From contig NC_043021.1 in NCBI RefSeq assembly GCF_006345805.1, positions 4,340,001-4,404,000 on the forward strand: a DNA stretch of 64,000 nucleotides, written 5' to 3'. The first letter of the stretch is position 1, and each line of letters opens with the position of its first letter. Below the pieces are notes generated by a model that worked only from the letters and a program-made list of their open reading frames with translations, did no database searches and was not told the DNA's origin. This document shows positions 1,010-63,754 of the stretch, piece by piece. Made by a program: the position numbers and the translations under genes. Source of the DNA: Octopus sinensis. Lineage: Eukaryota.

Positions 1010-2317
1010 TGCCATAGTAACGAAGCTGAAGCACACAGAGTAAAGCTCCTAGGCACAGGCTGACTTTCAACGCTACTGTGCATGCACACTAAGTTTTAAC
1101 GTTTTAGCTCACTTCCACTGTTTACAGCAGTGCTTGGAAGGAAGGTGTGTAGTGTGTGATCATTGCACTGATTTACAGCAGTGCTTGGAAGGAAGGTGTG
1201 TAGTGTGTGATCATTGCACTGACCATGGCAGAGAAAGCTGAGCAGAGAACCTGCATTACATTTTGCCAAAAGCTTGGTGACACCTGCTCAGAGGCCTATG
1301 CAAAGTTTTCAAAAAGTTTTCATCATTCGTGACAGCATCAAGGAGATCTTCTGCAACTGAAACCCGAGTGTCTTTTTGGTCAGCTGAAAGCAGTTTTGGC
1401 ACAAACTTGGCAGACATGCATCTCATACCCAACTCTTCAGTTATAATGGACTGAACTGAACCGTAACTGTACATCCTCTGATAATTCACGGATGGTGATT
1501 CAACAATTTCTCCTCACAGCTGCATGCACATCTGCAATGATTTTCTCAGTTCCACTGGTTGCAGGTCTCCCCAGAACATTCATCAATATTGGCATCTTTG
1601 CAGCCATCTTGGAAACATCTGTACCACTCGTACATTTGTGTAGGATGTGCAATGGCCCAGTGGTTAGGGCAGCGGACTCGCGGTCGTAGGATCGCGGTTT
1701 CGATTCCCAGACCGGGCGTTGTGAGTGTTTATTGAGCGAAAACACCTAAAGCCTCCACGTGGCTCCGGCAGGGGATGGTGGTGATCCCTGCTGTACTCTT
1801 TCACCACAACTTTCTCTCGCTCTTACTTCCTGTTTCTCTTGTACCTGTATTTCAAAGGGCCGGCCTTGTCACTCTCTGTGTCACGCTGAATATCCCCGAG
1901 AACTACGTTAAGGGTACACGTGTCTGTGGAGTGCTCAGCCACTTACACGTTAATTTCACGAGCAGGCTGTTCCGTTGGTCGGATCAACTGGAACCCTCAT
2001 CGTCGTAACCGACGGAGTGCTTCCACCACATTTGTGTGCAGCTCATACACTCCTCTCCATACGCTTTCTGCAACTTTGCGTAGGCCTCTGAGCAGGTATC
2101 ACCATGATAACTTTCTCTGTCATGGTCAATGTGACAATCACACGCTACACACCTTCCTTCCAAGCATTGCTGTAAACAGCGAAAGTAAGCTAGAATGTTA
2201 AAACTTAGTGCGCATGCACAGCAGTATTCAAGGTCAATCTATGCCAAGCAGCTTCACTCTGCATGCTTTAGTTTCGTTACTATGGCAACAGTCCAGATAC
2301 TTATTGATAAGACCTCA
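1010..2317 (-). mobile_element. Non-autonomous mariner derivative with an inverted duplicate of its 5' end
   Basis: Minus strand gives a decayed mariner N-terminus (EAYAKLQKAYGEECMS...ITIRELSEDV...SAKFVPKLLSADQK). Plus strand 1225-1307 gives a second N-terminus MAEKAEQRTCITFCQKLGDTCSEAYAK. Arms 1010-1307 and 2072-2288 are inverted. Mariner-like TIR ends at 2317 followed by TA. Confidence 0.85.
1642..2027 (+). mobile_element. tRNA-derived SINE (family D) inserted in the mariner relic
   Basis: A box TGGCCCAGTGG and B box GGTTTCGATTCC; 10-bp TSD ACATTTGTGT at 1632-1641 and 2028-2037; related copy at 22975. Confidence 0.85.
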
Positions 2318-2458
2318 TATATATATAATTGTTAAAGAGGGCAACAAACATTAAGGCAAAGCAAACATCTCAAGTCATCAGCACTTACCTAGTGTACCTA
2401 ATTGCTTAGATCACCTGTGAACTAAACCCTCATACTTTGTAGGTGTGTGTATGTGTAT

Positions 2459-2869
2459 TACTCTTTACTCTTTTACTCTTTTGCTTGTTTCAGTCATTTG
2501 ACTGCGACCATGCTGGAGCACCGCCTTTAGTCGAGAAAATCGACACCGGGACTTATTCTTTGTAAGCCCAGTACTTATTCTATCGGTCTCTTTTGCTGAA
2601 CCGCTAAGTGACGGGGACGTAAACACACCAGCATCGGTTGTCAAGCAATGCTAGGGGGACAAACACACACACACAAACACACATATATATATATATACAT
2701 ATATACGACAGGCTTCTTTCAGTTTCCGTCTACCAAATCCACTCACAAGGCATTGGTCGGCCTGGGGCTATAGCAGAAGACACTTGCCCAAGATGCCACG
2801 CAGTGGGACTAAACCCGGAACCATGTGGTTGGTTAGCAGGCTACTTACCACACAGCCACTCCTGCGCCT
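2459..2869 (-). mobile_element. tRNA-derived SINE family A (internal TA/TG microsatellite, GTAAAAGA tail)
   Basis: Head AGGCGCAGGAGTGGCTGTGTGG...GGTTCAGTCCC; more than 10 similar copies in the window. Confidence 0.9.
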
Positions 2870-3042
2870 ATTATATTGCGCCCAACGTGTATGTGTATAT
2901 AGGGCAGGCTTCTTTCAGTTTCTATCAATCAAATCCACTTAAAGTTTTGGGGCTACAGCAGTGGGGATGAAACCATAAATCACATGGTTTGGAAGCAAGC
3001 TTGTTACTCACACAGCCATTAAAGAAAACGTTGTACACAATG

Positions 3043-3083
3043 CTTTGCTGATGAGGTTTACTAAGACCAAAACATGTCCAGAG
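3043..3083 (+). ncRNA. Minimal type-I hammerhead-like motif (Penelope type), G12A variant
   Basis: Stem I CTTTG/CAGAG, core CTGATGA, stem II GGTTT/AGACC, AAA in place of GAA, palindromic ACATGT, GUC triplet. Confidence 0.65.
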
Positions 3084-4240
3084 TTGTCACTATACAGACA
3101 AAAGGTAAACTTATTCTGTTCTAGTTTAATTAACATTAAACATAAACTGACCTGAGTTGTCTCCCATGTCCTTTTTAATCAGAGTTAGTTGTTAAGATAA
3201 CAAATGGTTCTGTCCACTGTGGCTGTAAGGTTTATTAATTGAAATCTCTTTGTTCACAACATTAAACACATTAGCTTCCACTTAATTATTGGTTTCTTAT
3301 AACTGAGTCTTTGTCCATTAAAATTTTATACATTACCTACCCATATTATATGTATTTCTTTACTACCCACAAGGGCTAAACACAATATATATCCTCATGG
3401 CCAGATGTATTTTTGTTGAATAAGGAAAATGAATGACACTGCTTGTATAACAGTGATGCTCGTTTCCAGCTGTCACACTTTTTCAAGACATGGACCCTTC
3501 CCCCAACACACACACACACATGATGGATTTCTTTCAGTTTCTGTCTACCAAATTTATTCACACACTTGGTTGGCCCTTGGTTATAGTAGATGACACTTGC
3601 CCAAAATGTTTCATAGTGGGACTGAACCTGAGATCTCATGGTTGGGAAACAAGCTCCTTAACTACACAGCCATTCCTGTGCCTATGTTAGAGTCAAATAA
3701 TCTGCATTTCTTTTTGCTTCTTTGTCGATTGGGGATCAAAATAGATTTAAATGATAGAGACAATGTTAATAAGGTGGATGGATTGTGTGACAGTAGTGCA
3801 TCAGAAATGGATGATTATCAAGACAGAGTTAGATTCTGTAGCGGCATTGGTAAGATAAGTGAGAGAATGATTGCTGAGGCACCAAGTAATTGACAGGGAC
3901 GAAGTTTGTTAATTAGAGTAGAAGATCTTTAAGTAGTAAAGAGATATCGGATACAACAGAGGGAAAGGAATTTACAGTCGAGAGAGATGAATAAATAGAA
4001 AAATGGGTGTTCGATGAATGATTATGATACTATTGATTTTATTATCAAAATTAGCCTGTAGATTCAACGTTGATTCTCAGTTGAAGTAATTACATTTCGC
4101 TTAAGTCACTAATGACCATTAAAATGACATGACTGTCACTCGCTCATATAGTTCCTTTGCAAATGTTCTATTAAACCTTAGGCTTTGGTTGTATTCAGAG
4201 ACCGTTTTATTATATATTTATAATGTCATATAATATGGGT

Positions 4241-4473
4241 AGGCGGCGAGCTGGCAGAAGTGTTAGCGTGTCGGGCGAAATACGTAGCCGTATTTCGTCT
4301 GTCATTACGTTCCAAGTCCAAATTGCGCCGAGGTCGACTTTGCCTTTCATCCTTTCGGGGTTGATTAAATAAGTACCAGTTATACACTAAGGGTTGATGT
4401 AATTGACTTAATCCGTTTGTCTGTCCTTGTTTGTCCTCTCTGTGCATAGCCCCTTGTGGGTAGTAAAGAAATA
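4241..4473 (+). mobile_element. tRNA-derived SINE family B (Meta-domain-like core)
   Basis: GGCGGCGAGCTGGCAGAA head; GTCGACTTTGCCTTTCATCCTTTCGGGG...AAGTACCAG core; AAAGAAATA tail. Confidence 0.9.
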
Positions 4474-10381: not shown

Positions 10382-11599
10382 TGTCAAATGCTTTGGTGTA
10401 TGACTTTTTGTCTACTCTGTACATTTTATTCAGCTAAGGCAACTCCAGAGCCTCAGAGTGGAATCTAAATCTACAAGAAATAACAGCCATAATCGCCTTC
10501 AAATCACACTATTGGAAAAAAAAAATAATAAGACATAAGATAATATAGGTAAGCCGTTGTGACAGCTGGAATGTCTCTGATCAAAGGTCTGCTCAATCAA
10601 GGTTGACCTGGGGTTAAACAACAACATTACTTGTCCCACATTATCATATCTAGTTCCAAGTGTACTTTCTATTCAAGTGTTTCAATGTCATTGAGTAAAG
10701 AAAAAAAAAAGCAAGAGATCAATTTACCTCTCTCTCCTTTTTTTTTTTTTTCTGTTTTGCTTTGTTTTTTTTTACATTATTTCTGAAATTCCGAGTAAAA
10801 TTATACACTATTCACTCTTTAATCAGAAGTAATGGAAATTGCCAACCAGACATTAACACTTTCATGACAACAGTGTTCTAATAAATAACACCCACTTCGC
10901 TTTTCAGAATTTAAAAACAAAAATTTGGTGAGATTTTGTGTGTGTGTGTGTGTGTGTATGTGTGTGATCGTCATCATCATCATCATTTAACATCTGTTGT
11001 CCATGCTGGCATGGGTTGGATGGTTTGACCAGGGCTGTGAAGTTGGAAGGCTGCACCAGACTCCAGTCTGATTTGGCATGGTTTTCTACAGCTGGATGCC
11101 CTTCCTAACGCCAACCACTCTGAGAGTGTAATGGGTGCTTTTACATGCCACTGGCATGGGTGCCATTTGCATGGCACCAGTATCTGCCATGACTGTGACT
11201 GCTCAGCTTGATGGACCTTCTCAAGCACAACATAATCCCAAAGGTCTCAGCCATTGCCTCCATTAGACCTAGTGCTCAAAAGGAACTCAGCTACTTTGCC
11301 TCTGTGAGGCCCAACGCTTGAAAGGAACTCAGCCACTTACATATAGGGCCAACACTTGAAAGGAACTTAGTCATTTACATATAAGGTGTGATAGGTAAAT
11401 TGTCACTATTTCATACTATCAATTTTGCACATGTGCATTGTTTGTTTTTGCTTATACTATACTACACAGTATAGTAGGGTCAGGTGGGCACTGTCTCTGA
11501 GAAAAACAGCACCATGACACAATTCACTCTGCTAGAAATTTGGAAAACAATATGCTGTACTGCTCGGCATTCATGCCAGAAGCTCCAATACAAACATGT

Positions 11600-11975
11600 A
11601 CTGAGAGTGATAAAAATCAAACATCCAGTCAGCATCATGGTGTTTGGAGTGATCACTAATGATGGCAACGTTAGGTCTCCAGTCATCTTCCCACATGGCC
11701 TCATCAAGTGCCTGGAAGAGGTAGTGCTGCCCTCGGTCAAGAGGGTGGCTGTTAGAAGACCCTATGTCAGGCAACAGGACTCTGCACCATGCCATGCAAG
11801 CAGGAGAACCCAGTCATGGTTGCCAGGCATCACCCCTAACATCTGACCACCTAATCCCCAGACTGCAACCCCCTTGATTATTATGCATGGGGCACAGTTG
11901 AGCAAGAAACCAATAAAACTCCTTGTAACACCGAAGATGAACTGAAGGCAAGGACTATGGCAGCATTCCAGAAAA
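11600..11975 (+). pseudogene. Decayed Tc1/mariner-superfamily transposase, catalytic half (maT/rosa-like motifs)
   Basis: KHPVSIMVFGVIT...QQDSAPCHASRRTQSWL...then a frameshifted PLDYYAWGTVEQETNKTPCNTEDELKAR. Confidence 0.75.
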
Positions 11976-12883: not shown

Positions 12884-13289
12884 AGGCACAGGAGTGGCTG
12901 TGTGGTAAGTAGCTTGTTTACCAACCACATGGTTCCGGGTTCAGTCCCACTGCGTGGCACCTTGGGCAAGTGTCTTCTACTATAGCCTTGGGCCAACCAA
13001 TGCCTTGTGAGTGGATTTGGTAGACGGAAACTGAAAGAAGCCCGTCGTATATATGTATATATATATATATATATATTTCTTTACTGCCCACAAGGGGCTA
13101 AACATAGAGGGGCGAACGGATTAAGTCGATTACATCGATCCCAGTACGAAACTGGTTATTTATTTAATGACCCTGAAAAGACGAAAGGCAAAGTCGACCT
13201 CGGTGGAATTTGAACTCAGAACGTAACGACAGACGAAATACGGCTACGCATTTCACCCGGCGTGCTAACGTTTCTGCCAGCTCGCCGCC

Positions 13290-13372
<83 letters not shown>

Positions 13373-16292: not shown

Positions 16293-16343
<51 letters not shown>

Positions 16344-16399
16344 GTGTGTGTGTGTGTATATATATATAATATATATATATATGTATATGTGTGTGTGTA

Positions 16400-16435
<36 letters not shown>

Positions 16436-16781
16436 TGTATAATCTGCGATTTGAATAGCATCATTATTTACTTGTTCTATAATTCTATTTGTCAAGTTGC
16501 CATGAGCAGCGGTGGTTAGACTTTATAGAACTATGTCTAAATATCTACTCTACCACACTGGCTCGACTTGGCTTGGCTGAGGAGTGCAGTCTTTATATTC
16601 ATGCCCAGGAGTAAAGTCAATTGCATCAACCACCAATGTTCAACTGGTTCTTATTTTATCAACCCCAAAAGGATGAAAGGTGAAGTCAGACTTTGAAGAA
16701 GTTGAACTCAGAACGTAAGGACAGATGAAATACTGCTAAGCATTTTGCCTGGCATGCTAATGTATTATAACAAGAACCAAA

Positions 16782-24800: not shown

Positions 24801-25706
24801 ATTTTTTTTGCTGGCATGAATTGGACAAATTTTCTGAAGTAATGTTGTATAACTGATTGCTCTTCTTGTCATTAACCCTTTTAGTTGGTGCATGGCTCAG
24901 TGGTTAGAGAGCTAGATTCACAATCATGAGGTAGTGAGTTCAACCAGGCTGTGTGTTGTGTTCTTGAGCAAGACACTTTATTTCACATTGCTCCAGTTCA
25001 CTCAGCTGTAGAAGTGAGTTGTGATGTCACTGGTGCCAAGCTGTATTTGCCTTCACCTTTTCTTTGGATAACATCGGTAACATGAAGAGGGGAAACTGGT
25101 ATGCATGGGCAACTGCAGTCTTCCATAATCAACCTTGCCTGGATTTGTGCTTCGGCAGGAGATGAACTTTCTAGGTGCAATCCCATGCTTATTCATGACC
25201 AAAGGGGATCTTTTATTTTTTTATGACACAGGGGGAGACAGAGTGACTATTCTAAAACCAGGATACACCTTTTATTTCAATAATCTCCCTCCTTGACCAG
25301 TCATCTTGTGAGTAGGGGTTAGTCAATTACATCAACCCCAATGTTCAGCTGGTACTTATTTTATCAACTCCAAAAGGACGAAAGGCAAAGTTAATCTCAG
25401 TGGCATTTGAACTCAAAAAGAACATAAAACCAGAAGAAATTTCTACTTAGCATTTTGTCTGGCAAGCTGACAATTCTGCCAACTCCTCACCTTCATTATA
25501 ATAATATTGATTTCAAATTCTGGCACAAGACCAGGGAGAGGTTAAGTCAATTACATTGACCTGAGTGTTCAACTGGCACTTATTTTATCAACCTCAAAAG
25601 GATAAAAGGCAAAGTCACCCTCGACAGAATTTCAATTCAAAGCATAAATAAAGGTGCCAAGCATTTTGTCAGCTGTTTTAATGAGTCTGCCAGGTCATAG
25701 CCTTAA

Positions 25707-26152
25707 CCCTTTAGCGTTCACATTATTCTGCCAAAATTAATGCTTTTTAATCCACGTTGTTTTGAGCTAATCCTGCATTATCTTGTAGTTATGAGATTTT
25801 GATGAGGTAGCTGTTAATTTTTAAAACGATATTGTAGGGTTGGTGTGAGAGACCAGATCTGGCCAGTTTGAACATAAAACAGGTAGAATATTTTTGGCCG
25901 GATATGGCCGGTTTAAATGCTAAAGGGTTAACCCTTTAGTGTTCACATTATTCTGCCAAAATTAATGCTTTTTAATCCACATTGTTTTGAGCTAATCCTG
26001 CATTATCTTGTAGTTATGAGATTTTGATGAGGTAGCTGTTAATTTTTAAAACGATATTGTAGGGTTGGTGTGAGAGACCAGATCTAGCCAGTTTGAACAT
26101 AAAACAGGCAGAATACTTTTGGCCGGATATGGCCGGTTTAAAAGCTAAAGGG
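25707..26152. mobile_element. Tandem dimer of piggyBac-type MITE family 2 (2 x 221 bp)
   Basis: TTAA at 25703, 25928 and 26153; CCCTTTAG...CTAAAGGG TIRs; the two copies are nearly identical. Confidence 0.9.
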
Positions 26153-27072
26153 TTAATAATAATGGACTCTCCCATTGAAGATGACATATGAGTGTTCAGC
26201 TTTTTTGTTGAACAGCCTGCACAAATGATTTGTTTATAGGGATCATATGTATGCGCTGTATGTTATCTTGCTCCCTCCGTCAAATCAACAATACCTGAAC
26301 AGGTGCATGGGGTACCAGACATCAGGTGTCAAAGTGATTGCAGAGCAATGCAAGATGAAGTGCTTTGATGAAGAACACAACGCACCACCAACGCACTCCA
26401 TCAATTACGATGACAAAGGTTTCAAATGATCCAATCGAAGGTACTGCTTACTTGAGAAATTAGCAAGCAAGTGGCTGAGTACCCCACAGACATGCATATT
26501 CCTAACATAGTTTTCAGGGAGATTCAGAGTGACACAAAATGACACCTGGCCTGCTCTTTGAATTACAGGTACGTCCCATTTTGGTCAGCTGATTAGACTG
26601 GAGCAACATGAAATAAAGTGTCTTGCTCAAGGATAAAATGCACCATAGGGAATTGAACTCACGACCTAGGCCAACGGGTCTGGGGGTAAGGGGTTAAGTC
26701 AAATCAACCCCAATGTTCAACTGGTACTTAATTTATTGACCCCAATATTTTTACATGCTATTATTTATACCTCTCTATATGTGTGATTGTTGAGATATGC
26801 CATTGCAGAAAATGCATTATTTCACATTCTCTCAAAAGTTTATAAAATTTTCATGGATGGACACACACACACACGAAGGGTTTTAACTTAATTTCAATCT
26901 AGCAAATTCACTCACAAGACATTGGTCGGCCCAGAGCTATTATAGAAGACACTTGGTCAAGATGACATGCAGCAGGACTGAACCTGAAACCACATGGTTG
27001 CAAAGAGAGCTTCTTAACCACACAGCTATACCTGTACCAAGCCACATATTTTTTTTTTTTTAATTTGGCACA

Positions 27073-30351: not shown

Positions 30352-30934
30352 TCCTTTCTACTAAAGGCACAAGGCCCGAAATTTTAGGGGAAGGGACTAG
30401 CCAATTAAATCGACCTCAGTGTTTCACTGGTACTTAATTTATCGACCCTGAAAGGATAAAAGGAAAAGTTGACCTCGCCGGAATTTGAACTCAGAACTTA
30501 ACGGCAGACGAAATACCTATTTCTTTACTACCCACAAGGGGCTAAACACAGAGGGGATGAACAAGGACAGACAAACAGATTAAGTCAATTATATCGACCC
30601 CAGTGCATAACTGGTATTTATTTAATCGACCCCGAAAGGATGAAAGGCAAAGTTGACCTTGGTGGAATTTGAACTCAGAACATAACGGCAGACGAAATAC
30701 TTATTTATTTACTACCCAAAAGGGGCTAAACACAGAGAGGACGAACAAGGACAGACAAACGGATTAAGTGAATTATATTGACGCCAGTGCATAACTGATA
30801 CTTATTTAATCGACCCCGAAAGGATGAAAGGCAAAGTCAACCTCGGCGGAATTTGAACTCAGAACGTACTGATGGGCAAAATACTGCTAAGCATTTTGCC
30901 AGACGTGCTAATGATTCTGCCAGCTCACTGCCTT
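30352..30934 (-). mobile_element. Head-to-tail trimer of SINE family B
   Basis: Junctions GACGAAATAC|(C/T)TATTT at 30516/30517 and 30700/30701; 184-bp period. Confidence 0.85.
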
Positions 30935-31432
30935 AATAATAATAATAATCCTTTCTACTATAGGCACAAGACCTGGAATTTGTGGGGCGGGGGGGGGGTG
31001 TTGATTACATCAACCCCAGTACTTGACTGATACTTATTTTATTGACCCTGAAAGTATGAAAGGCAAACTGAACTTTGGCAGAATTTGAACGCAGAACATA
31101 ATAGTGGCAGATGAAATACTGCGAAGAATTTGCCCAGCATGCTAACGATTCTGCCAGCTCATCGCCTTTCAGTAATAAGAAGAACTATGATTAAAGGTTT
31201 CAAATTTTGGCACAAGACCAGCAATTTCTAAGGAGGGCATAAGTGAATTACATCAACTCAGCCGGTACTTATTTTATCAACCCTGAAAGGACGAAAGGCA
31301 AAGTCAACCTCAGCAGAATTTGAACTCAGAACCTAAAGACAGACCATATGCTGGTAAGCATTTTGCCTGGTATGCTAACAACTCTACCAGCTCACAGCCT
31401 TAAACCTGTATAACATATTGATCATTGATAAA

Positions 31433-32653: not shown

Positions 32654-33204
32654 CAGTGATTCTCAACTGGGGGTCCATGCAACAAAATAGTAAATTGGGG
32701 ATCCACAATAGTACTTAAAGGGTCCCTGAAAAAATTTTGCCTTAGGTGTATGTATTGGTATGTATTGCAAGAAACATCTGGGTTTCTTTCTTTAGCATTT
32801 TACATAATTCAACCTACACAAGTTAATGTGTGAAACACAAAATAGGAATTTAAAAAGAAGCAATTTTTAAACATCAAATGACTAGGGGGAGGGGTGTCCA
32901 CCAGAATAGAATAGAAGACGGTGAGCTGGCAGAAACGTTAGCATGCCAAGCGAAACACTTAGTGGCATTTCGTCTGTTGTTATGTTCTGAGTTCAAATTC
33001 CGCCGAGGTTTACTTTGCCTTTCATCCTTTTGGGGTCGATAAATTAAGTACCAGTTATGCACTGGAGTCGATGTAATTGACTTAATCCATTTGTCCGTCC
33101 TTGTTTGTCCCCTCTATGTTTAACCCTTTGTGGGAAATTAAAAAAATAAGAATAGAATAGTAATCAAAGGGGTCCATAGAGGAAAAAATAGTTGAGAACT
33201 CCTG
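32654..33204. mobile_element. hAT-type MITE with a nested family B SINE
   Basis: TIRs CAGTGATTCTCAACT / AGTTGAGAACTCCTG; degenerate 8-bp TSD CTCTTCAA / CTCTATAA; nested SINE flanked by GAATAGAATAG. Confidence 0.7.
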
Positions 33205-35129: not shown

Positions 35130-35760
35130 ACTAATTCTTAGCAGATTTCATGACAGTATGAAAACAGATTTCACGGTTTCAAGCAAGTATGGAACAACAG
35201 ACAGACAATAATAACAATGAAACTACTAGCAGATTTCACTGATTCATGAAAGCACCCACTACACTCACGGAGTGGTTGGCGTTAGGAAGGGCATCCAGCT
35301 GTAGAAACATTGCCAGATAAGACTGGAGCCTGGTGCAGCCTTCTGGCTTCCCAGATCCCCAGTCGAACCGTCCAACCCATGCTAGCATGGAGAACGGACG
35401 TTAAACGATGATGATGATGAAAGTATGAAACAGCAAACAGACAACAATAAAAATGAGACTTTTCACGATTTCAAGCAAGTATGGAACAACAGACAGACAA
35501 TAATAACAATGAGACTTCCAGCAGATTTCACTGATTCATGAAAGTATGAAACAGCAAACAGACAACAATAAAAATGAGACTTTTCACGATTTCAAGCAAG
35601 TATGGAACAACAGACAGACAACAATAACGATGAGACTACAAGCAGATTTCGCTGATTCATGAAAGTATGAAACAGCAGACAGACAATAAGAAAGAGTAGA
35701 CTTCCAACACACTCTTCTAGTTCAAAGAAGTATGAAACAACAAACAGGCAATAATAATGA
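35130..35760. repeat. ~120-bp tandem repeat interrupted by a family C SINE 3' end (35258-35420)
   Basis: Repeated CAAGCAAGTATGGAACAACAGACAGACAATAATAAC...GATTCATGAAAGTATG units. Confidence 0.8.
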
Positions 35761-36829
35761 GGAGATGGAAGATAGACAGAAAAAACAAAGAGGAAGTTAA
35801 AAGGGAAACAAGAAACCTTTTAATTCGACTTCATAGCTCTCTCTGTTTTATGTTGGCAGAAAGTGAGATGAAATTGTGCATCAATAAACTCCATTAGGAT
35901 CTGATGAAATAGAGTTTTAGAGGAAAAATAGCCCGTCGTATATATGCTGGTGTGTTTACGTCGCCGTAACTTAGCAGTTTGGCAAAAGAGATCAATAGAG
36001 TGAGTACTAGGCTTACAAGTCCTGGGGTCAATTTGCTTGACTAAAGGCGGTGCTCCAGCATGGCCACAGTCAAATGACTGAAACAAGTAAAAGAATAAAA
36101 AAAAGAGTAATTCTTTAGCATCTAAACTGACCAAATCCACCCGATATTCTGACATGTTCAGACTGACCGTATCCAACCTTTCCAACATATATTTCTTTAC
36201 TACCCACAAGGGGCTAAACACAGAGGGGACAAACAAGGACAGACAAAGGGATTTAGTCGATTACATCGACCCCACTGCATAACTGGTACTTAATTTATTT
36301 CCAACATAGCCTTCAGTGTCATTCTAAGAATGAAACTATCACATCATTGAAATGTCAAAGCTATGGTTAATACAAAACAATACGAATAAATAAGCATTAC
36401 ATTTCACATAATAGTCTGAATGCTAACAGGTTAATTAGTACATTAAACAATCGATTAGTTGGTTAGGTATTTAACCAATTGATTAACAAAGAAATGATAT
36501 CAAACTATTGTGTGTGTGTGCATGTGTGTGTTGTTATTGGCATAATGACCCACCCACCCCCAAACCGAGACACAACCAGATTTGTTTCAATGCATGAATT
36601 CACATCAAGAATCTTGTTAATCAGGTATGAAAACGAAGTACACTAATGATGGTAATTAAGTAGCAAATACATTCTTATTTGATGAATGGGGATTTTTTTT
36701 TTACTATCTGATGGAGACTTGAGCTGGTGGCTGTGACCTTCAAGCAAGAAATCCACACGATTTTTAACTGACTGTTATGATGCAAATGTTTAGTAAAATA
36801 TAACAAACAGGTTTCCTGTCATTTGAGAG

Positions 36830-37787
36830 AGAGAGCCAGTCAGACAGAGAGACAAAGAGCGAGACAAACAGAGAGAGAGAGAGAGATTGAGAGGGAGAGA
36901 CCGACAGACTGACAGACAAAGAGCGAGACAAACAGACAGAGAGATTGAGAGGGAGAGACCGACAGACTGACAGACAAAGAGCGAGACAAACAGACAGAGA
37001 GATTGAGAGGGAGAGACCGACAGATTGACAGACAAAGAGCGAGACAAACAGACAGAGAGATTGAGAGGGAGAGACCGACAGACTGACAGACAAGAGCGAG
37101 ACAAACAGACAGAGATTGAGAGGGAGAGACCGACAGCTGACAGACAAAGAGCGAGACAAACAGACAGAGAGATTGAGAGGGAGAGACCGACAGACTGACA
37201 GACAAAGAGTGAGACAAACAGACAGAGAGATCGAGAGGGAGAGACCGACAGACTGACAGACAAGAGCGAGACAAACAGACAGAGAGATTGAGAGGGAGAG
37301 ACCGACAGACTGACAGACAAAGAGCGAGACAAACAGACAGAGATTGAGAGGGAGAGACCGACAGACTGACAGACAAAGAGCGAGACAAACAGACAGAGAG
37401 ATTGAGAGGGAGAGACCGACAGACTGACAGACAAAGAGCGAGACAAACAGACAGAGAGATTGAGAGGGAGAGACCGACAGACTGACAGACAAAGAGCGAG
37501 ACAAACAGACAGAGAGATTGAGAGGGAGAGACCGACAGACTGACAGACAAAGAGCGAGACAAACAGACAGAGAGATTGAGAGGAGAGACCGACAGACTGA
37601 CAGACAAAGAGCGAGACAAACAGACAGAGAGATTGAGAGGGAGAGACCGACAGACTGACAGACAAAGAGCGAGACAAACAGACAGAGAGATTGAGAGGGA
37701 GAGACCGACAGACTGACAGACAAAGAGCGAGACAAACAGACAGAGAGATCGAGAGGGAGAGACCGACAGACTGACAGACAAAGAGAG
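36830..37787. repeat. 58-bp purine-rich minisatellite, about 16 copies
   Basis: Unit GAGAGATTGAGAGGGAGAGACCGACAGACTGACAGACAAAGAGCGAGACAAACAGACA. Confidence 0.95.
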
Positions 37788-47925: not shown

Positions 47926-48500
47926 GCATGCAGCATCTAACACACGTACATGTACCAAAACACACATGCAACAAATAACACATGCACATACACCAACACA
48001 CACGCATATCCAACAGCACACACACATGCAACAACAGACACACCAACTAATAAATATAGACATGCCAACTTGCACCTCAACACACATGCACCAACACTAA
48101 CTTACACATCAACAAACACACACACACACACACACATATATGTACACCTGAACCAACGGATGCATACAAATCCACCTACCAATACACTCACACACCAACA
48201 CACACGCACCAGCTATCACCCACCCACCCACACACTCACCAACTACCACTAACACACACACACACATGCACCAATTAACACACACCCCACTAACATAGAT
48301 AAGGAAAATAAACTTGGCGATGAGTCAGTCAGTAAGAGATAAATCAAAGTTAAGTTTTAAAATTTGACAACTCCAAAGAAAAAACATTCAGAATCTTATG
48401 AAAATCTAATAAACCCGTTAGCATTTAAGCCAGCTAAACCCAGCCAGAATATTCTGCATGTTTAAGCAATGTGTTCATGGATGATTAAGGGGTTAGATGG

Positions 48501-48592
48501 ATGGGGGATCACTCGGCTCGTCCGTCGATGAAGAGCGCGGCTATCCGCGTGAACTGATGCGAATTGCAGGACTCGGTGAACATCGACACCTC
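48501..48592 (+). pseudogene. 5.8S rRNA fragment (5' portion, retroposed)
   Basis: GGATCACTCGGCTCGTCCGTCGATGAAGAGCGCGGC...GAATTGCAGGAC...CATCGACAC aligns without gaps to the conserved eukaryotic 5.8S as I recall it; no ITS or 28S flanks. Confidence 0.9.
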
Positions 48593-48597
48593 TTAAT

Positions 48598-48830
48598 GAA
48601 GGTGGCGAGCTGGCAGAAACGTTAGCACAGCCGGCAAAATACTTAGCAGTACTTCGTCTGCTCCTACGTTCTGAGTTCAAATTCCGCCGGGGTCCACTTT
48701 GCCTTTCATCCTTTCGGGGTCGATTAAATAAGTACCAGTTATGCACTGGGGGTCGATGTAATTGACTTAATTCCTTCGTCTGTCCTTGTTTGTCCCCTCT
48801 ATGTTTAGCCCCCTGTGGGCAATAAAGAAA
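48598..48830 (+). mobile_element. SINE family B fused downstream of the 5.8S fragment
   Basis: Full family B body; 15-bp TSD TAAGGGGTTAGATGG (48486-48500 and 48831-48845) encloses both parts. Confidence 0.9.
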
Positions 48831-50368
48831 TAAGGGGTTAGATGGGTACTGATGAAGGGACAAAATCTCCTGAAACATGGCATATATGCCCATCACTTTT
48901 TCATCTTCAATTTCATTGTTTCAGGTATGAAATGCCATAACAAAAATCAGTGCTGGCCATAATTTCTATAGAACACCCATAGAGAAAATCTTAACAAGTG
49001 ATGTCTGTTTTATGTTCAAACTGGCCAGATCCAAATCTCACACCTACCCAACAATGTCATTCTGAAAATATACCATCACATCATTGAAATCTCAAAGCTA
49101 TGAGACAAAATAGGATTAATTCAAAACAATGTGAATAAATAAGCATTACATTTCAGAGAGGGTCAATCAGCCTTGAAAGGTTTAGTTAAAGAAATCACCC
49201 CCACCCCCGTGCTTTTTTTTTTTTTTTTAATGCAAGGTACTTAATTCTATCAGTCTTTTTTTCCTGACCTGCTAAGTTATGGGAAAGTAAACAAACCAGC
49301 ACAGGTTATCAAGACTAGTGGTGAGAAACACACACACACACACACACAACAGGTTTCTTTCAGTTTCCATCTACCAAATCCAATCACATGGCTCGCTCAA
49401 GGTGCCACACACTGAGACTGAATCCAGAACCATGTGGTTGAAAAACAAACTTCTTACCACACTGCCACTCTTGCACCTATATATATATTACTCTTTTTTT
49501 TACTCTTTTACTTGTTTCAGTCATTTGACTGCGGCCATGCTGGAGCACCACCTTTAGTCGAGCAAATCGACCCCGGGACTTATTCTTTGTAAGCCCAGTA
49601 CTTATTCTATCGGTCTCAAAATGGGACATGGGACTATCTTCTACTATAGAATTGGTTTTACCCTAGTTCATCTAATGAGCCCCAGTTTATTACTAGTATT
49701 TAATTTGAATAAGGAAGAAAGTCGAAGTATGCTCAGCCAGGGTTTAAACTAGGAATGTAAAAAGAACATGACTAAATCCTGTTAGGGGTTTAAACTAGTG
49801 CCTTACAAAATGTAATGGGGACTAGAGGTAGCAGTGGAGGGGAAAAAAATAAAATGGAAAAGGGTAAATACTTCCAGCGAATACAAACACCCAATACTTC
49901 ATAGCAAACACGTCCTCAGTACATAGGTACAGAATGTAAAGAGAAGTGAAGTGGTTGGTACTGAATGCAAATACTAGCATCACCATCACCATCACCATCA
50001 CCACCACCCACATGACCAATCTGAAGTAGGTTAATTATCATGGTATCTATTTCCGCTCTACCTACGAGGGAATCTATTAAAAAATTACTTTCAATAAAAT
50101 GATAGTCCACTTCAGTTACTAGTCTCTCTGCTTCTTTCAAACTTCCATTGAACGGACAAAGTAAATTTTTTTTTTTAGGGCAGAAATAGGTGACTGTAGC
50201 AGCAACAGCTGTGGTACCAACATTTAAAAGAAAGAATGACAAGTCACTGACAAGATGGTCTCATACACACAATACTTCTCTATCTATCTGTATACACACT
50301 TGGAAAAAATCAATAGCTACTTATAAACATTTATATACCTCAACACTGCCTGTCCGTCTGTCTGTTTG

Positions 50369-50398
50369 TAGATAGATAGACAGATGGATAGATAGATG

Positions 50399-50486
<88 letters not shown>

Positions 50487-50487
50487 C

Positions 50488-50536
<49 letters not shown>

Positions 50537-50557
50537 TATAGGTAGATAGATAGATAC

Positions 50558-50589
<32 letters not shown>

Positions 50590-50652
50590 GGACAGATAGA
50601 TAGACAGATGGATAGATAGATAGATATATATATATAGATAGATAGACAAATG

Positions 50653-50683
<31 letters not shown>

Positions 50684-50690
50684 GGATAGA
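50369..50690. repeat. (GATA)n microsatellite
   Basis: About 320 bp of imperfect GATA, running into a SINE A tail. Confidence 0.95.
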
Positions 50691-50777
50691 TTTTACTTGT
50701 TTTAGACAGATTGTGGCCATGCTGGAGCATGGCCTTGAAGAGTCTTTAGTCAAATGAATCAACCCCAATACATTATA

Positions 50778-54831: not shown

Positions 54832-56102
54832 CTGGGCCATCCCATAAATAACAAATTTTTTTATACTTCTTTTATTTTTCAAAATTAAGAAAAACAAAGT
54901 TTTTTTTAAATCTAAATATACTCTCCTTCATTTCCTACAATGCTCTCCCATCTATCTGGTAGACTTGCAAGGTCCTTTTTCTAAAATTCACTTGTCTGTG
55001 ATGAAAAATATTCCTCCAGTACTGTTCTGACCTCATCTACAGAATTCATATTTTTTCTGTCCAAATGATTTTGAAGACTGTGGAATAAATGATAATCAGA
55101 TGGGGCAATGTCTGACGAATATGGTGGGTGGGGCATCGTTTCCCATTCAAACTGCTTCGGCCTTTGGAATGTCATCCCTGTTGGATGTGGTCAAGCATTA
55201 CCCTGATAGAAGAACACCTTTTGTCTTGAAACCAAAGATGGTGCTTTTCTTCTAGCGCTGACTTAAGCTGCTCATAGAAGATCTCCTTTGTTATCATTTG
55301 GTTTGGGTTTAAAAGTTCAAAGTGGACTAAACATTTCATATCCCACCAAACAGATAACACCTTATGTGGATGAAGACCTTCTTCAGCCTGGGGTGCCAGT
55401 ATTTTTCCTTTCCTTACCCATTGTCTCCGGCACTTGACATTTTTATAGAGAACCCATATCTTGTCACTAGTCACTATTTGGTCCGAAAAAGGTTCATTCA
55501 TGAGATGTGACAGCAAAGAAGAGCACACATTCACTCTCTGTGTGAGATTAGACTGGGAAAGTTTGTGATGAACCTACTGACCCAATTTGCTGGCTTTTCC
55601 AATGGCACGCAAGTGTCAATGAATGGTTGAATGACCAAATCCAATCTTCTTTGCTAGTTCGACAGTTATGAGGAGATTTTGTTCCACCAGGGTTTGCAGG
55701 ACATCCTTGCCAAGCTCTACAGATCTTCCAGGACGAGGCTCATCTTCTAGGATGTAATTTCCGGATCGGAATTTCTGGAATCACCGTTGACACTGGCTTA
55801 TGCTTATTGTCCAATCCCCATATACTACATTAATATTCCTCGCACTTTCCATTGCATTGTTGCCTTTATTGAAGGCATAAATCAAAATATGTTGAATATG
55901 CTCCTTTGTCACTTCCATTATAGCTTTGAAAAAATAACTATTAAAACTGAAGTACACTCTTCAAAACTTGCACTAAGAATAAGCATGAGGTAAAATTACT
56001 ACCTGCTTTTATAGCAAATTGATGCAGGTAGTTTATCCTGTCCCTCTCCGACTTTTAGTTCATGTAATTGAAAAAAACTGCATTATTTATGGGATGACCC
56101 AA
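54832..56102 (-). mobile_element. Full-length degenerate mariner element (1271 bp) inserted in a family A SINE
   Basis: TIRs (C/T)TGGG(C/T)CATCCCATAAATAA with TA TSDs; SINE halves on both sides (about 54658 and 56310). Confidence 0.9.
54930..55918 (-). pseudogene. Mariner D,D,D-type transposase pseudogene
   Basis: MEVTKEHIQHILIYAFNKG...EDEPRPGR...*VHHKL...DQIVTSDKIW...HPPYSSDIAPSDYHLF, with stops and frameshifts. Confidence 0.9.
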
Positions 56103-56368
56103 TATATATATGTGTGTGTGTGTTTGTTTACCACTTACTGCTTGACAACCGGTGTTGGTGTGTTAACATTCCTGTAACTTAGCAGTTTGGTTTGGCGAAA
56201 GAGAGCAATAGAATAAGTACCAGGATTTATAAAAATAAGCACTGGGATTAATTCTTTTTTGGACTAAAACTTTTTAAGGTGATGCCCCAGCATAGCCACA
56301 ATCTGAAACAAGTAACAGATACACATATGACATACATACATGCATATACATCTATGTATATATATATC

Positions 56369-56419
<51 letters not shown>

Positions 56420-56940
56420 TCACCCACAAGAAATACGTTAGGATATAAAACTAATTAACAAGAAATGGAATAGCAGCATTAAGTTACGTATCAATAACGA
56501 GCGTATTTAAGTCAAGCTTAAGTGACTAACTTTTATTAAGCTGTTGCTCAAAAGTTTACTCATTCCGTTACTTCAGGAGGGGGCTGCGCATTTCTTGACA
56601 ACGAGAGCTTTTCTACATCGTCGTTCAACCTGCTAAAAACTACTGTCAAAATCTCCCAAAAGCATACACTACTATTATAAAAAGGAAGGAAAAGTATGTT
56701 AAATAATAATAATAATAATAATATGTATAGTCCTACTTGCTCTCTCTCTCTCCCTACACACACACTCACACAAATACCAAGCTGGTTACGGTCAGAATGC
56801 TTTTGATCATAGGTAGGTCTGCGCAATCAAGGTTAACCCGATGCCAAACAGCTACTTATTTCTCCACTGATTACTAATTAAGGTAAAAAAAATTTTTTAA
56901 AAAAAACAACTTCAACATTAAAAATAAAGATCAGCCTTAC

Positions 56941-59560: not shown

Positions 59561-59621
<61 letters not shown>

Positions 59622-60281
59622 TTAGGGAATAAATTATTATTCCAACCTTACAGGTAAAATTCAGTATAATAATATTAGACCAAATTCGTAATATATAATA
59701 TATGTATATAACTAATTTAGAGACGAACCACCATTCCACAACTCAGTCAATGAAGAACCCATCCAAAACCATGTTGTAAGACATATACCATACAAAATAC
59801 TAATCTATAATTTTAATAATCTATAATATTGAACAGAAGGCGGCGAGCTGGCAGAAACGTTAGCACACCGGGCAAAATGCGTAGCCATATTTCGTCTGCC
59901 GTTACGTTCCGAGTTCAAATTCCACCAAGGTCGACTTAACCTTTCATCCTTCCGGGATCGATAAATTAAGTACCAGTTACGCACTGTGGTCGATGTAATC
60001 GACTTAATCTCTTTGTCTGTCCTTGTTTGTCTCCTCTATGTTAGCCCCTCGTGGGTAGTAAAGAAATATATAATATTGAACAGTAAGCTTATTGCAATCA
60101 TATAATATATCAGAGCAAATACTTTTAAAATCACAGCGAATACCATAGTATAAAACATTCATCATAAAAATATTAATCTAAAATCAAATAAAGTATAAAT
60201 TGAACAATAAAATTAGTAATATAATGTATAAAAGTAAGTACTTGGACATTGACTACGCGCATTTCACGGCTGAATTAGGGC

Positions 60282-60315
<34 letters not shown>

Positions 60316-60609
60316 ATATATATTATTCTTTTACTTCTTTCAGTCATTTGACTGCAGCCATACTGGAGCACCACCTTTAGTTGAACAAATCGAACCTAGG
60401 ACTTATTCTTGTAAGCCTACTACTTATGCTATCAGCCTCTTTTGCTGAACTGCTAAGTTACGAGATTCTTTCAGTTTCCATCTACTAAATCCACTCACAA
60501 GGCTTGGCTAGTCCAAGGCTATAATAGAAGACACCCAACATGCCACACAGTAGGACTGAACCCAGTTAGGAAGCAGGCTTCTTACCACACAGCCACTCAT
60601 ATATAATAA

Positions 60610-60671
<62 letters not shown>

Positions 60672-61337
60672 AATATTAGGGAATAAATTATTATTCCAAC
60701 CTTACAGGTAAAATTCAGTATAATAATATTAGACCAAATTTCGTAATATATAATATATGTATATAACTAATTTAGAGACGAACCACCATTCCACAACTCA
60801 GTCAATGAAGAACCCATCCAAAACCATGTTGTAAGACATATACCATACAAAATACTAATCTATAATTTTAATAATCTATAATATTGAACAGAAGGCGGCG
60901 AGCTGGCAGAAACGTTAGCACACCGGGCAAAATGCGTAGCCATATTTCGTCTGCCGTTACGTTCCGAGTTCAAATTCCACCAAGGTCGACTTAACCTTTC
61001 ATCCTTCCGGGATCGATAAATTAAGTACCAGTTACGCACTGTGGTCGATGTAATCGACTTAATCTCTTTGTCTGTCCTTGTTTGTCTCCTCTATGTTTAG
61101 CCCCTCGTGGGTAGTAAAGAAATATATAATATTGAACAGTAAGCTTATTGCAATCATATAATATATCAGAGCAAATACTTTTAAAATCACAGCGAATACC
61201 ATAGTATAAAACATTCATCATAAAAATATTAATCTAAAATCAAATAAAGTATAAATTGAACAATAAAATTAGTAATATAATGTATAAAAGTAAGTACTTG
61301 GACATTGACTACGCGCATTTCACGGCTGAATTAGGGC

Positions 61338-61371
<34 letters not shown>

Positions 61372-61380
61372 ATATATATA
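59264..61380. repeat. Near-identical ~1.06-kb tandem duplication bounded by (TA)n
   Basis: 59264-60324 is repeated at 60325-61380; visible differences are single-base homopolymer indels and TA-tract length. Confidence 0.95.
59837..60068 (+). mobile_element. SINE family B with 15-bp TSD (duplicated copy near 60893)
   Basis: TSD TATAATATTGAACAG at 59822-59836 and 60069-60083. Confidence 0.9.
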
Positions 61381-62631: not shown

Positions 62632-63015
62632 GAAATGGAAAAGAGAAAAACATTTCATCATCCGTTGGCAGAAATATAAAATATTTGACAAGAATGTTTT
62701 TATGTTAAAGAATGCAGTACATTGACTGTGTTTGGCAAAAGCAAGAATTTGTTGGAAACTATTCAGTGTAGTATAAAACAAGCTAACCTCAGATATTTAA
62801 TGATTTTTTTTTTTTTGATTTTGTTAACACAAAAGGTAATATTCTGAGAGATATTCATTCACTATGTAAGGGAAATAAACTGACACTGATAGACTGCGGA
62901 CAATACAGTATGTTGTTGTTGTGAAGGGAGATTTGGCCATCAGGCTGATAGAAGACATGATGTTAGTGTTAACAATGGTGGTGACCAGCCCAAGGAAAAA
63001 CAAAAACCTTTGATA

Positions 63016-63754
63016 AAAGACCTGGGTGTTATTGTCGACAGTGATTTGCGTTGGACAAAATACATCGCTAAAATTGTTAAGAAGGCTGAGGGTGTCTTGG
63101 CATCACTCACCAAATCCTTTGTGAGCCACTCTCCGACTATCTATCTGCGGCTTTATATAGCTATGGTAAGACCTCACCTGGAATTTGCATCACCGGTCTG
63201 GAACCCCTATCTTGCCCAGGATATCAATCCTCTGGAAACCGTTCAGCGACGTGCAACTAAAAGAATACCCTCCATCAGGCATTTGCCATATCCTGAAAGC
63301 CTTACTTCCCTGGGCATGGACACATTGAAACTCCGACGTCTGGCAGCTGACTTGGCAGACACCCATAAAATTATCAACCATCTTACAAACAATAACTCTG
63401 AGCATCTTTTCAAACTCCATCCATCTAACACCCGTGGACATATTTACAAAGTCAGAAAACAGCACAGCTCCCGTGACTTCAGGAAACATTTTTTCACGCT
63501 GAGAGTTGCTGAAGCATGGAACTGCTGGCATCAGTTGTTAGTTGTCGGAGCACTGCATCCTTCAAAACTTCCATGCTTTCTGAGATTCGCCAACACTACA
63601 CCTGATTTTCTGCCCTCCATACACACACAAACATGTATCTGACTCATGCATTGTTCGCTTTCCAGACATTTGTACATTACTGCATGTACTTTATACGCAC
63701 TTTCTGACAAGTTGTGGTGCACCTGAGCACTGTATACTATAATTTCATTATTAT
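63016..63754 (+). mobile_element. 5'-truncated CR1-type LINE (ORF2 C-terminus and 3' UTR)
   Basis: KDLGVIVDSDL...MVRPHLEFASPVWNPY...VQRRATK...TRGH...FFTLRVAEAWN; frameshift near 63520; (ATT)n-like tail. Confidence 0.9.

What the first reader, a model, noticed from the sequence alone, without database searches (positions are those of the whole stretch)
48486..48845. 5.8S rRNA-SINE chimera inserted as one retrotransposition event
A ~90-nt 5' portion of 5.8S rRNA is followed after about 5 nt by a complete family B SINE, and a perfect 15-bp TSD (TAAGGGGTTAGATGG) encloses both. The fragment keeps its CpGs and a compensated GCGG/CCGC stem, so it looks recent. SINE heads from tRNA, 7SL, 5S, U1/U2 and 28S are established; I know of none from 5.8S. 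The simplest model is a template switch from SINE RNA to 5.8S rRNA during target-primed reverse transcription, like U6-L1 chimeras. If repeated elsewhere, it would be a new composite SINE.
Basis: partly seen in the sequence, partly recalled or inferred. Interest (0 to 1): 0.75.

Follow-up and report, generated by a model that had tools for sequence, protein, structure and literature searches.

The report
5.8S rRNA piece fused to SINE
A 92-base piece of the animal's own 5.8S ribosomal RNA was copied into the genome head-to-tail with a mobile SINE element in what looks like one retrotransposition event; it is a tidy single example of a known kind of accident, with an RNA partner I did not find reported.

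Summary
A perfect 15-bp direct repeat (48486-48500 and 48831-48845) encloses three parts:
- a 5.8S rRNA fragment (48501-48592);
- six unmatched bases, TTAATG;
- a complete 232-bp SINE (48599-48830).

Both RNA-derived parts lie on the + strand.

I recovered cephalopod rDNA contigs through spurious database "proteins". Against them the fragment equals 5.8S nt 9-100 with 2 differences in 92 (97.8%). The "compensated GCGG/CCGC stem" is simply the normal cephalopod 5.8S sequence. No ITS or other rDNA is present in the window.

The SINE starts at the same base as other window copies that carry their own 12-15-bp duplications. Neither part has a duplication of its own. The last three bases of the duplication (TGG) match 5.8S nt 6-8.

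The best reading is one target-primed reverse transcription event. The enzyme copied the SINE RNA to its 5' end, added or copied six bases, jumped to a 5.8S RNA at nt 100, and the cDNA end joined by microhomology.

I found no sign of a propagating 5.8S-headed SINE family: 1 of about 20 SINE copies in the window carries the fragment, and 5.8S has no internal promoter. The genome-wide search and the orthologous empty-site check could not be run.

It is a new member of a known kind, of modest interest.

The parts
48486..48500 (.). 5' copy of the target-site duplication, TAAGGGGTTAGATGG. Its last three bases TGG (48498-48500) also match 5.8S nt 6-8, a microhomology at the 5' junction.
48501..48592 (+). 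5.8S rRNA-derived fragment, equal to nt 9-100 of the 159-nt 5.8S of cephalopod rDNA contigs L011 and L012. It has 2 differences: C->T at a CpG (48502, nt 10) and A->G (48575, nt 83). No ITS1 lies upstream.
48593..48598 (+). 6-nt filler TTAATG. It matches neither 5.8S (GAACGC at nt 101-106) nor the SINE consensus start. It is read as non-templated addition at the template jump, or as a short 5' leader of the SINE transcript.
   Evidence: cmscan can force a weak alignment to 5.8S nt 101-106, but 3 changes in 6 nt is out of line with 2 in 92 elsewhere.
48599..48830 (+). It has box A-like and box B-like motifs and the family's non-poly(A) tail ...GGGCAATAAAGAAA.
   Evidence: The SINE part hits an Octopus bimaculoides protein.
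48831..48845 (.). 3' copy of the target-site duplication, TAAGGGGTTAGATGG. The first TA may belong to the SINE tail.

Best explanation
This is a bipartite chimeric retrocopy made in one target-primed reverse transcription (TPRT) event in an octopus-lineage genome. The proposed steps are:
1. A LINE endonuclease/reverse transcriptase nicked the target at ...GATGAT|TAAGG... and primed on the 3' tail of a SINE RNA.
2. It copied the SINE to its very first nucleotide.
3. It added six bases (TTAATG), or copied a six-base leader of the SINE transcript.
4. It jumped to a second template, 5.8S rRNA, entering at nt 100. That acceptor was either a 3'-truncated 5.8S fragment or an internal single-stranded site at the edge of a helix.
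5. It copied the 5.8S to within 5-8 nt of its 5' end.
6. The cDNA end was joined to the staggered second-strand break through a TGG microhomology, which produced the 13-15-bp target-site duplication.

Shown: the anatomy, the near-identity to cephalopod 5.8S, the absence of ITS, the single duplication and the precise SINE 5' end. Inferred: the order of events, the jump itself and the identity of the enzyme.

The product is most likely a dead end. The 5.8S part brings no promoter, and the SINE's internal Pol III boxes would start transcripts at or near the SINE's own first base, which would leave the 5.8S part out of any progeny.
For: - Single perfect 15-bp duplication around the whole 345-bp insert. 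The best repeats flanking the SINE alone (7 bp) or the 5.8S alone (5 bp) are within chance.
- The SINE begins at exactly the base where two independent copies with their own 12-15-bp duplications begin, and it ends with the family tail.
- The 5.8S piece equals nt 9-100 of the 5.8S in two cephalopod rDNA contigs, at 90/92 identity.
- The whole rDNA unit gives no other hit in the window, so there is no ITS1 and no 3' half.
- Both parts have the same orientation.
- TGG microhomology lies at the 5' junction.
- The breakpoint at nt 100/101 sits at the 3' edge of the Rfam helix formed by model positions 40-43 and 99-102, just before the single-stranded GAAC stretch.
- Chimeras of LINE-1 with U6, U3, 5S, tRNA, 28S, 7SL, 7SK and Y RNAs, often truncated at loops, are documented (PMC13174262). 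So are chimeras involving a SINE in a fungus (PMC2104539).
Against: - No orthologous empty or half-filled site, no second genome copy and no read-level support could be examined.
- A read-through transcript from a SINE that had earlier inserted into a 5.8S gene or pseudogene would give the same final structure.
- The six filler bases are not diagnostic of a jump.
- The partner LINE was not identified.
- The 5.8S of the window's own species was not available. Only close relatives were (L011, L012; organisms not named by the tools).
Confidence: 0.68

Rival explanations
1. Co-transcript model. A SINE had earlier inserted into a 5.8S gene (in an rDNA unit or a dispersed rDNA fragment) at nt 100. 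An RNA running from the processed 5.8S 5' end through the SINE was then retrotransposed as one template through the SINE tail. No template jump is needed.
For: It gives the same anatomy: a precise SINE 5' end, the same orientation, one duplication and no ITS if the 5' end was processed. Dispersed rDNA fragments do exist in a cephalopod genome (L013, L014).
Against: It needs two rare events plus transcription and 5' processing of a disrupted 5.8S. No source copy was seen. 5.8S rRNA itself is far more abundant as an acceptor template (inference).
Confidence: 0.12
2. RNA ligation before reverse transcription, as proposed for U6/LINE-1. A cleaved 5.8S 5' fragment was ligated to a SINE RNA, and the fused RNA was then retrotransposed.
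For: The two parts are joined in sense orientation at an internal 5.8S breakpoint next to a single-stranded stretch. Ligation is discussed as an alternative to template switching for such chimeras (PMC13174262).
Against: The six extra bases at the junction are not explained unless they are a SINE leader. A Pol III primary transcript has a 5' triphosphate, which is not a ligase substrate of that pathway (established knowledge, not tested here).
Confidence: 0.08
3. Two sequential, independent insertions that happen to abut. Either a SINE inserted first and a 5.8S fragment later landed exactly between the duplication and the SINE's first base, or the reverse.
For: None specific. It cannot be formally excluded without an orthologous locus.
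Against: There is no second duplication around either part. It would require insertion at one exact base. The 5.8S piece has no A-rich or LINE-like tail of its own with which to prime.
Confidence: 0.05
4. A member of a propagating composite SINE family with a 5.8S-derived head.
For: SINE heads from 5S and 28S rRNA and from snRNAs exist (PMC13174262 and PMC4494074).
Against: - Only 1 of about 20 full or partial SINE copies in 64 kb has the piece.
- No database ORF carries the junction.
- 5.8S is cut from a Pol I precursor and has no internal Pol III promoter (established knowledge).
- The 5' truncation with target microhomology and the filler look like a one-off junction.
Confidence: 0.04
5. 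Assembly artefact that joins an rDNA read to a SINE.
For: rDNA and SINEs are both high-copy and prone to mis-joins.
Against: A mis-join would not produce a perfect 15-bp duplication of unique flanking sequence around the pair, nor a 5.8S piece with private substitutions.
Confidence: 0.03

Closest known systems
U6/LINE-1 and other small-RNA/LINE-1 chimeric insertions (U3, U5, 5S, tRNA, 28S, 7SL, 7SK, Y RNA) in mammals
   Same: They are bipartite. The cellular non-coding RNA lies at the 5' side in sense orientation and the retroelement at the 3' side. One target-site duplication surrounds both. The RNA partner is often truncated at a loop. They are explained by template switching or RNA ligation during TPRT (PMC13174262).
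   Different: - The partner here is 5.8S rRNA. It is not in that catalogue and did not turn up in my two full-text searches.
- The 3' part is a full-length SINE, not a LINE.
- The host is a cephalopod, whose SINE has a specific non-poly(A) tail, so the enzyme is not L1.
- The 5.8S piece is 5'-truncated and joined by microhomology.
MINE / WEIRD / Mg-SINE bipartite and tripartite chimeric retrogenes of Magnaporthe grisea
   Same: They are chimeras that include a SINE and an abundant non-coding RNA, are flanked by one duplication, and are attributed to template jumps of a LINE reverse transcriptase (PMC2104539).
   Different: They occur in a fungus with a different LINE and different RNA partners, and they are recurrent there. 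Here a single locus is seen.
rRNA-headed SINE families (SINE3 from 5S rRNA; SINE28 from 28S rRNA)
   Same: An rRNA-derived 5' part lies in front of a LINE-dependent 3' part.
   Different: Those are multi-copy families that keep transposing. Here there is one copy, and the head lacks a promoter. SINE-family membership was tested in the window and not met.
Octopus tRNA-derived SINEs (OK, OR1, OR2; Ohshima and Okada 1994, cited in PMC4824008)
   Same: The 3' part is an abundant octopus-lineage SINE with box A/B-like motifs and a LINE-type tail.
   Different: I could not assign it to a named family. ARAGORN and Rfam tRNA models do not recognise its head.

Membership tests
Chimeric retrocopy formed in one TPRT event (U6/L1-type) | Two unrelated RNA-derived segments joined head-to-tail in the same orientation | tested here: met
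   5.8S nt 9-100 on the + strand followed by the SINE on the + strand
Chimeric retrocopy formed in one TPRT event (U6/L1-type) | One target-site duplication around the whole insert and none around either part | tested here: met
   15-bp perfect repeat around both parts. The best repeats for the SINE alone (7 bp) and the 5.8S alone (5 bp) are within the chance range.
Chimeric retrocopy formed in one TPRT event (U6/L1-type) | The 3' segment is a retroelement with its normal 3' end, able to prime TPRT | tested here: met
   The tail ...AAAGAAA(TA) is as in other copies that carry 12-15-bp duplications
Chimeric retrocopy formed in one TPRT event (U6/L1-type) | The 5' segment derives from the processed cellular RNA, not from its gene plus flanks | tested here: met
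   A whole rDNA unit matches only at 5.8S nt 6-100. No ITS1 or ITS2 is present.
Chimeric retrocopy formed in one TPRT event (U6/L1-type) | Orthologous site is empty in relatives, with no half-filled intermediates | not testable with these tools
   No octopus genome collection was available. The ORF-based look-ups found no orthologous contig.
SINE family with an rRNA-derived head | Many dispersed copies with the same head-body junction and different duplications | tested here: not met
   In the window, 1 of about 20 SINE copies carries the piece, and the rDNA query hits once. Genome-wide this was not testable.
SINE family with an rRNA-derived head | The head supplies an internal Pol III promoter | not tested
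   5.8S is processed from the Pol I precursor and has no known internal promoter (established knowledge). Box A/B-like motifs lie only in the SINE body.
Functional 5.8S rRNA gene (Rfam RF00002) | Full length of about 155-160 nt, lying between ITS1 and ITS2 in an rDNA unit | tested here: not met
   Only model positions up to about 100-106 are present. The match is cut at the 3' side when the piece alone is searched. No 18S, 28S or ITS lies nearby.

The most novel reading that the evidence does not exclude
The locus is one of a recurrent class. Octopus LINE reverse transcriptase would regularly jump from SINE RNA onto a specific 5' fragment of 5.8S rRNA (nt 1-100). This would yield many 5.8S-SINE chimeras, or even a propagating 5.8S-headed composite SINE, which would be the first mobile element with a 5.8S-derived part.
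Probability: 0.05. Interest if true: 0.6.

Novelty: new member of a known kind. Interest (0 to 1): 0.3.

Why it matters
If the single-event reading is right, two things follow. First, template switching or RNA capture during TPRT also operates in a mollusc LINE/SINE system with a specific, non-poly(A) tail. Second, a nucleolar or ribosomal RNA (5.8S) can be captured. Nucleolar RNAs are reported as under-represented among mammalian retropseudogenes (PMC5322556), and 5.8S is absent from the 2026 catalogue of LINE-1 chimeras (PMC13174262).

The locus is a clean textbook-style example, with every junction readable. It does not open a new question, and it is most likely an evolutionary dead end.

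A practical by-product: spurious database "proteins" translated from rDNA can be used to retrieve rDNA of poorly covered taxa.

Tried and rejected
1. Metagenome scan for 5.8S with the GCGGC...CCGCG stem. It returned eight GC-rich, apparently coding stretches unrelated to rRNA and two unrelated protist- or fungus-like 5.8S sequences.
2. Protein search with the 144-aa ORF spanning the whole chimera, to find orthologous loci or other copies. The only hit was one Octopus bimaculoides protein matching the SINE part, and its contig is not on record.
3. Search for host exons in the window, to fetch orthologous loci through annotated genes. Nothing was found but repeats, microsatellites, a mariner remnant and a LINE-like ORF.
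4. Full-text search for the sequences themselves and for the assembly accession. Nothing relevant came back, so the organisms of L011 (GCA_024449705.1) and L012 (ERR13252635) remain unnamed.
5. ARAGORN and permissive Rfam searches on the SINE head. There was no tRNA call, and the sub-threshold miRNA/snoRNA hits lie on microsatellites.
6. RNA folding of the fragment alone. The z-score was 0.28, so folding energy says nothing here.
7. The idea that the AT-to-GC differences from a generic 5.8S reflect compensatory evolution or RNA editing within this copy. I rejected it because the same bases are in cephalopod rDNA.
8. The idea that TTAATG is diverged 5.8S nt 101-106, which cmscan can align. I judged it unlikely, because 3 changes in 6 nt is out of line with 2 in 92 elsewhere.
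9. A possible SINE-only duplication, T(A/G)ATGAAGG. It is 7 bp exact, partly made of the SINE's own AAGG, lies beyond the 15-bp repeat, and is within chance.

Full report
**What is there.** The window is 38% G+C and consists almost wholly of SINE copies, microsatellites and transposon remnants. I found no host exon. At the reported place the sequence reads as follows:
- ...GATGAT
- TAAGGGGTTAGATGG, 48486-48500
- ATGGGGGATCAC...GACACCTC, 48501-48592
- TTAATG, 48593-48598
- AAGGTGGCGAGCTGG...GGGCAATAAAGAAA, 48599-48830
- TAAGGGGTTAGATGG, 48831-48845
- GTACTG...

The 15-mer occurs only at these two places in the window. It is the longest repeat between the two flanks. The analytic chance of such a match within +/-10 bp of both boundaries is about 1e-6. 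An empirical null built from random window positions reaches 15 bp or more in about 1% of trials, which I attribute to the window's tandem repeats and microsatellites. The focal 15-mer is not low-complexity.

**The 5.8S piece.**
- Rfam's 5.8S model is the only family that reaches its gathering score in the 64 kb: 58 bits against a threshold of 42. Searching the piece alone gives 59.4 bits, E 4.8e-15, with the match cut at the 3' side.
To learn whether these are decay or native, I needed cephalopod rDNA, which no DNA collection on hand contains.
- A metagenome pattern scan returned only two unrelated 5.8S sequences.
- I then concatenated the six-frame peptides of the fragment and searched the protein database. 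This hit 29 spurious "proteins" that are translations of 5.8S plus ITS. One is named as Acanthosepion pharaonis, a cuttlefish.
- The two best hits, P0002 and P0003, led to contigs L011 (NCBI GCA_024449705.1) and L012 (Logan ERR13252635). L011 carries 18S at 1080-3944, 5.8S at 4238-4396 and the 28S from 4844 onward. Both are genuine rDNA by Rfam.
- Their 5.8S sequences are identical to each other over the relevant part. They match window 48501-48592 at 90 of 92 positions, corresponding to nt 9-100 of the 159-nt 5.8S.
- The two differences are C->T at a CpG (nt 10, window 48502) and A->G (nt 83, window 48575).
- The stem GCGG/CCGC, the loop TAT and every other "odd" base are therefore the native sequence of this cephalopod lineage. 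The other hits, including the cuttlefish, carry CAG in the loop instead of TAT, and are more distant.
- BLAST of the entire L011 unit against the window gives one hit only, nt 6-100 on 48498-48592. So there is no ITS1, no 3' half of the 5.8S and no other rDNA.
- The extra three matching bases (TGG) are the end of the duplication, which makes them a junction microhomology.
- After nt 100 the rDNA reads GAACGC and the window reads TTAATG. cmscan can force a weak alignment there. However, three changes in six bases does not fit a copy that is 98% identical elsewhere, so I treat the six bases as filler.

**The SINE.**
- BLAST of the region against the window finds about 8 full-length and more than a dozen partial copies of the same element. 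None has 5.8S sequence upstream.
- Copies at 60892 (with its recent tandem duplicate at 59837) and at 32915 have their own 15- and 12-bp duplications. These abut the same first bases (AAGG/AAGA) and the same tail (AAAGAAATA).
- The focal SINE is therefore complete to its first nucleotide. The focal duplication length of 13-15 bp is typical of the family.
- The focal copy differs from a leave-one-out consensus at 11% of sites. Only 9 of 232 differences are private, the fewest of the eight copies.
- Together with 2/92 differences in the 5.8S part and 0/30 in the duplication, this points to a few percent of post-insertion change: fairly young, but not brand-new.
- The SINE has box A-like and box B-like motifs, but ARAGORN and Rfam do not call a tRNA.
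- Its translation hits an Octopus bimaculoides protein. This, with the rDNA result, places the window in the octopus lineage by inference.

**Mechanism.** Five features together are what a single TPRT event with a change of template produces:
- one duplication around both parts;
- no duplication around either part alone;
- the same orientation for both parts;
- a SINE that is intact exactly to base 1;
- a processed-RNA-type 5.8S piece.

The likely sequence of events is this. The enzyme primed on the SINE tail, ran to the SINE RNA's 5' end and added six bases (or copied a short leader). It then continued on a 5.8S RNA from nt 100 towards its 5' end. The cDNA was attached at nt 6-9 through the TGG microhomology.

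Nt 100/101 lies at the 3' edge of a helix in the Rfam consensus (model positions 40-43 paired with 99-102), just before the single-stranded GAAC stretch. This is reminiscent of the loop-associated truncation points reported for 5S, tRNA and U3 partners of LINE-1 (PMC13174262; PMC5322556).

I cannot distinguish an end-to-end jump onto a pre-cleaved 5.8S fragment from an internal switch. I also cannot exclude prior RNA ligation, or a read-through transcript from a SINE that sat inside a 5.8S gene. Sequential independent insertions and an assembly artefact fit the junctions poorly.

**Is it a new SINE family?** Nothing here says so.
- One copy in about twenty carries the piece.
- No database ORF carries the junction, although octopus DNA is barely represented there.
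- 5.8S brings no Pol III promoter.
- The 5' truncation with target microhomology is the signature of an individual integration, not of a family consensus.

I put this reading at about 4-5%.

**Comparison with what is known.** Chimeric insertions of LINE-1 with U1-U6, 5S, 7SL, 7SK, Y RNAs, tRNAs and 28S rRNA are catalogued. SINE-containing bi- and tripartite chimeras are known from Magnaporthe. SINE heads are known from tRNA, 7SL, 5S, 28S and snRNAs. Nucleolar RNAs are reported as under-represented among human retropseudogenes. I found no report of a 5.8S partner in two full-text searches; absence from that library is not proof.

The locus is thus a new member of a known kind. It has a new RNA partner, a SINE rather than a LINE as the 3' part, and a cephalopod host whose SINE tail is not poly(A).

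**Limits.**
- The species' own rDNA, the rest of its genome, sister-species orthologues and reads were all out of reach.
- The organisms behind L011 and L012 are not named by the tools.
- The partner LINE was not identified.

Noticed in passing
window 59600-60325 and 60655-61380: Near-identical tandem duplication of about 725 bp, differing by two single-base indels only. It carries a SINE copy together with its 15-bp target-site duplication. It is either a very recent segmental duplication or an assembly duplication.
   Followed up: partly
window 36823-37785: 58-bp minisatellite, 16.6 copies, 96% matches. Other arrays: (TAGA)n at 50369-50691, a 225-bp unit x2 at 25703-26156, and a 121-bp unit x2.3 at 35417-35693.
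   Followed up: no
window 30402-30865 (also 30390-31401, minus strand): Partial units of the same SINE arranged head-to-tail with a 184-bp period, 2.5 copies at 89%. A SINE-derived tandem array.
   Followed up: no
window 55175-55573 (-): Mariner-type transposase remnant (Pfam Transposase_1, E 5.7e-14). ORFs at 11478-11843 (+) and 1259-1513 (-) look transposase-like by eye but gave no Pfam hit.
   Followed up: partly
window 62893-63639 (+): 249-aa open frame resembling the C-terminal region of a non-LTR retrotransposon ORF by eye. It has no Pfam hit. It was not tested as the SINE's partner.
   Followed up: partly
window 48575: One of the two differences from rDNA 5.8S is A->G (nt 83). Mutation, an rDNA variant, a reverse-transcriptase error or A-to-I editing of the template cannot be told apart from one site.
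   Followed up: no
L014 6095-6644 and 4443-4560; L013 4910-6662: In the cuttlefish Acanthosepion pharaonis (GCA_903632075.3), a lone piece of about 550 bp (ITS1-5.8S-ITS2) sits in a 739-kb scaffold, 1.7 kb from a 5S rRNA gene. A 5.8S plus partial 28S sits in a 1.48-Mb scaffold. Both are annotated as proteins. Cephalopod genomes therefore carry dispersed rDNA fragments.
   Followed up: partly
proteins P0002-P0030: About 29 entries in the public protein collection are translations of cephalopod 5.8S/ITS in two frames. They are spurious gene calls, but useful as handles to fetch rDNA.
   Followed up: yes
L011 1080-3944: The 18S rRNA of this cephalopod contig is 2865 nt long, 62% G+C, with long GC-rich insertions relative to the Rfam model.
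   Followed up: no
window, many sites (e.g. 13286-13363, 16298-16439, 56354-56424): Sub-threshold Rfam hits to mir-297, mir-1277, mir-3149 and SCARNA7 all lie on TA/CA-type microsatellites and are far below their gathering scores. They are artefacts.
   Followed up: yes
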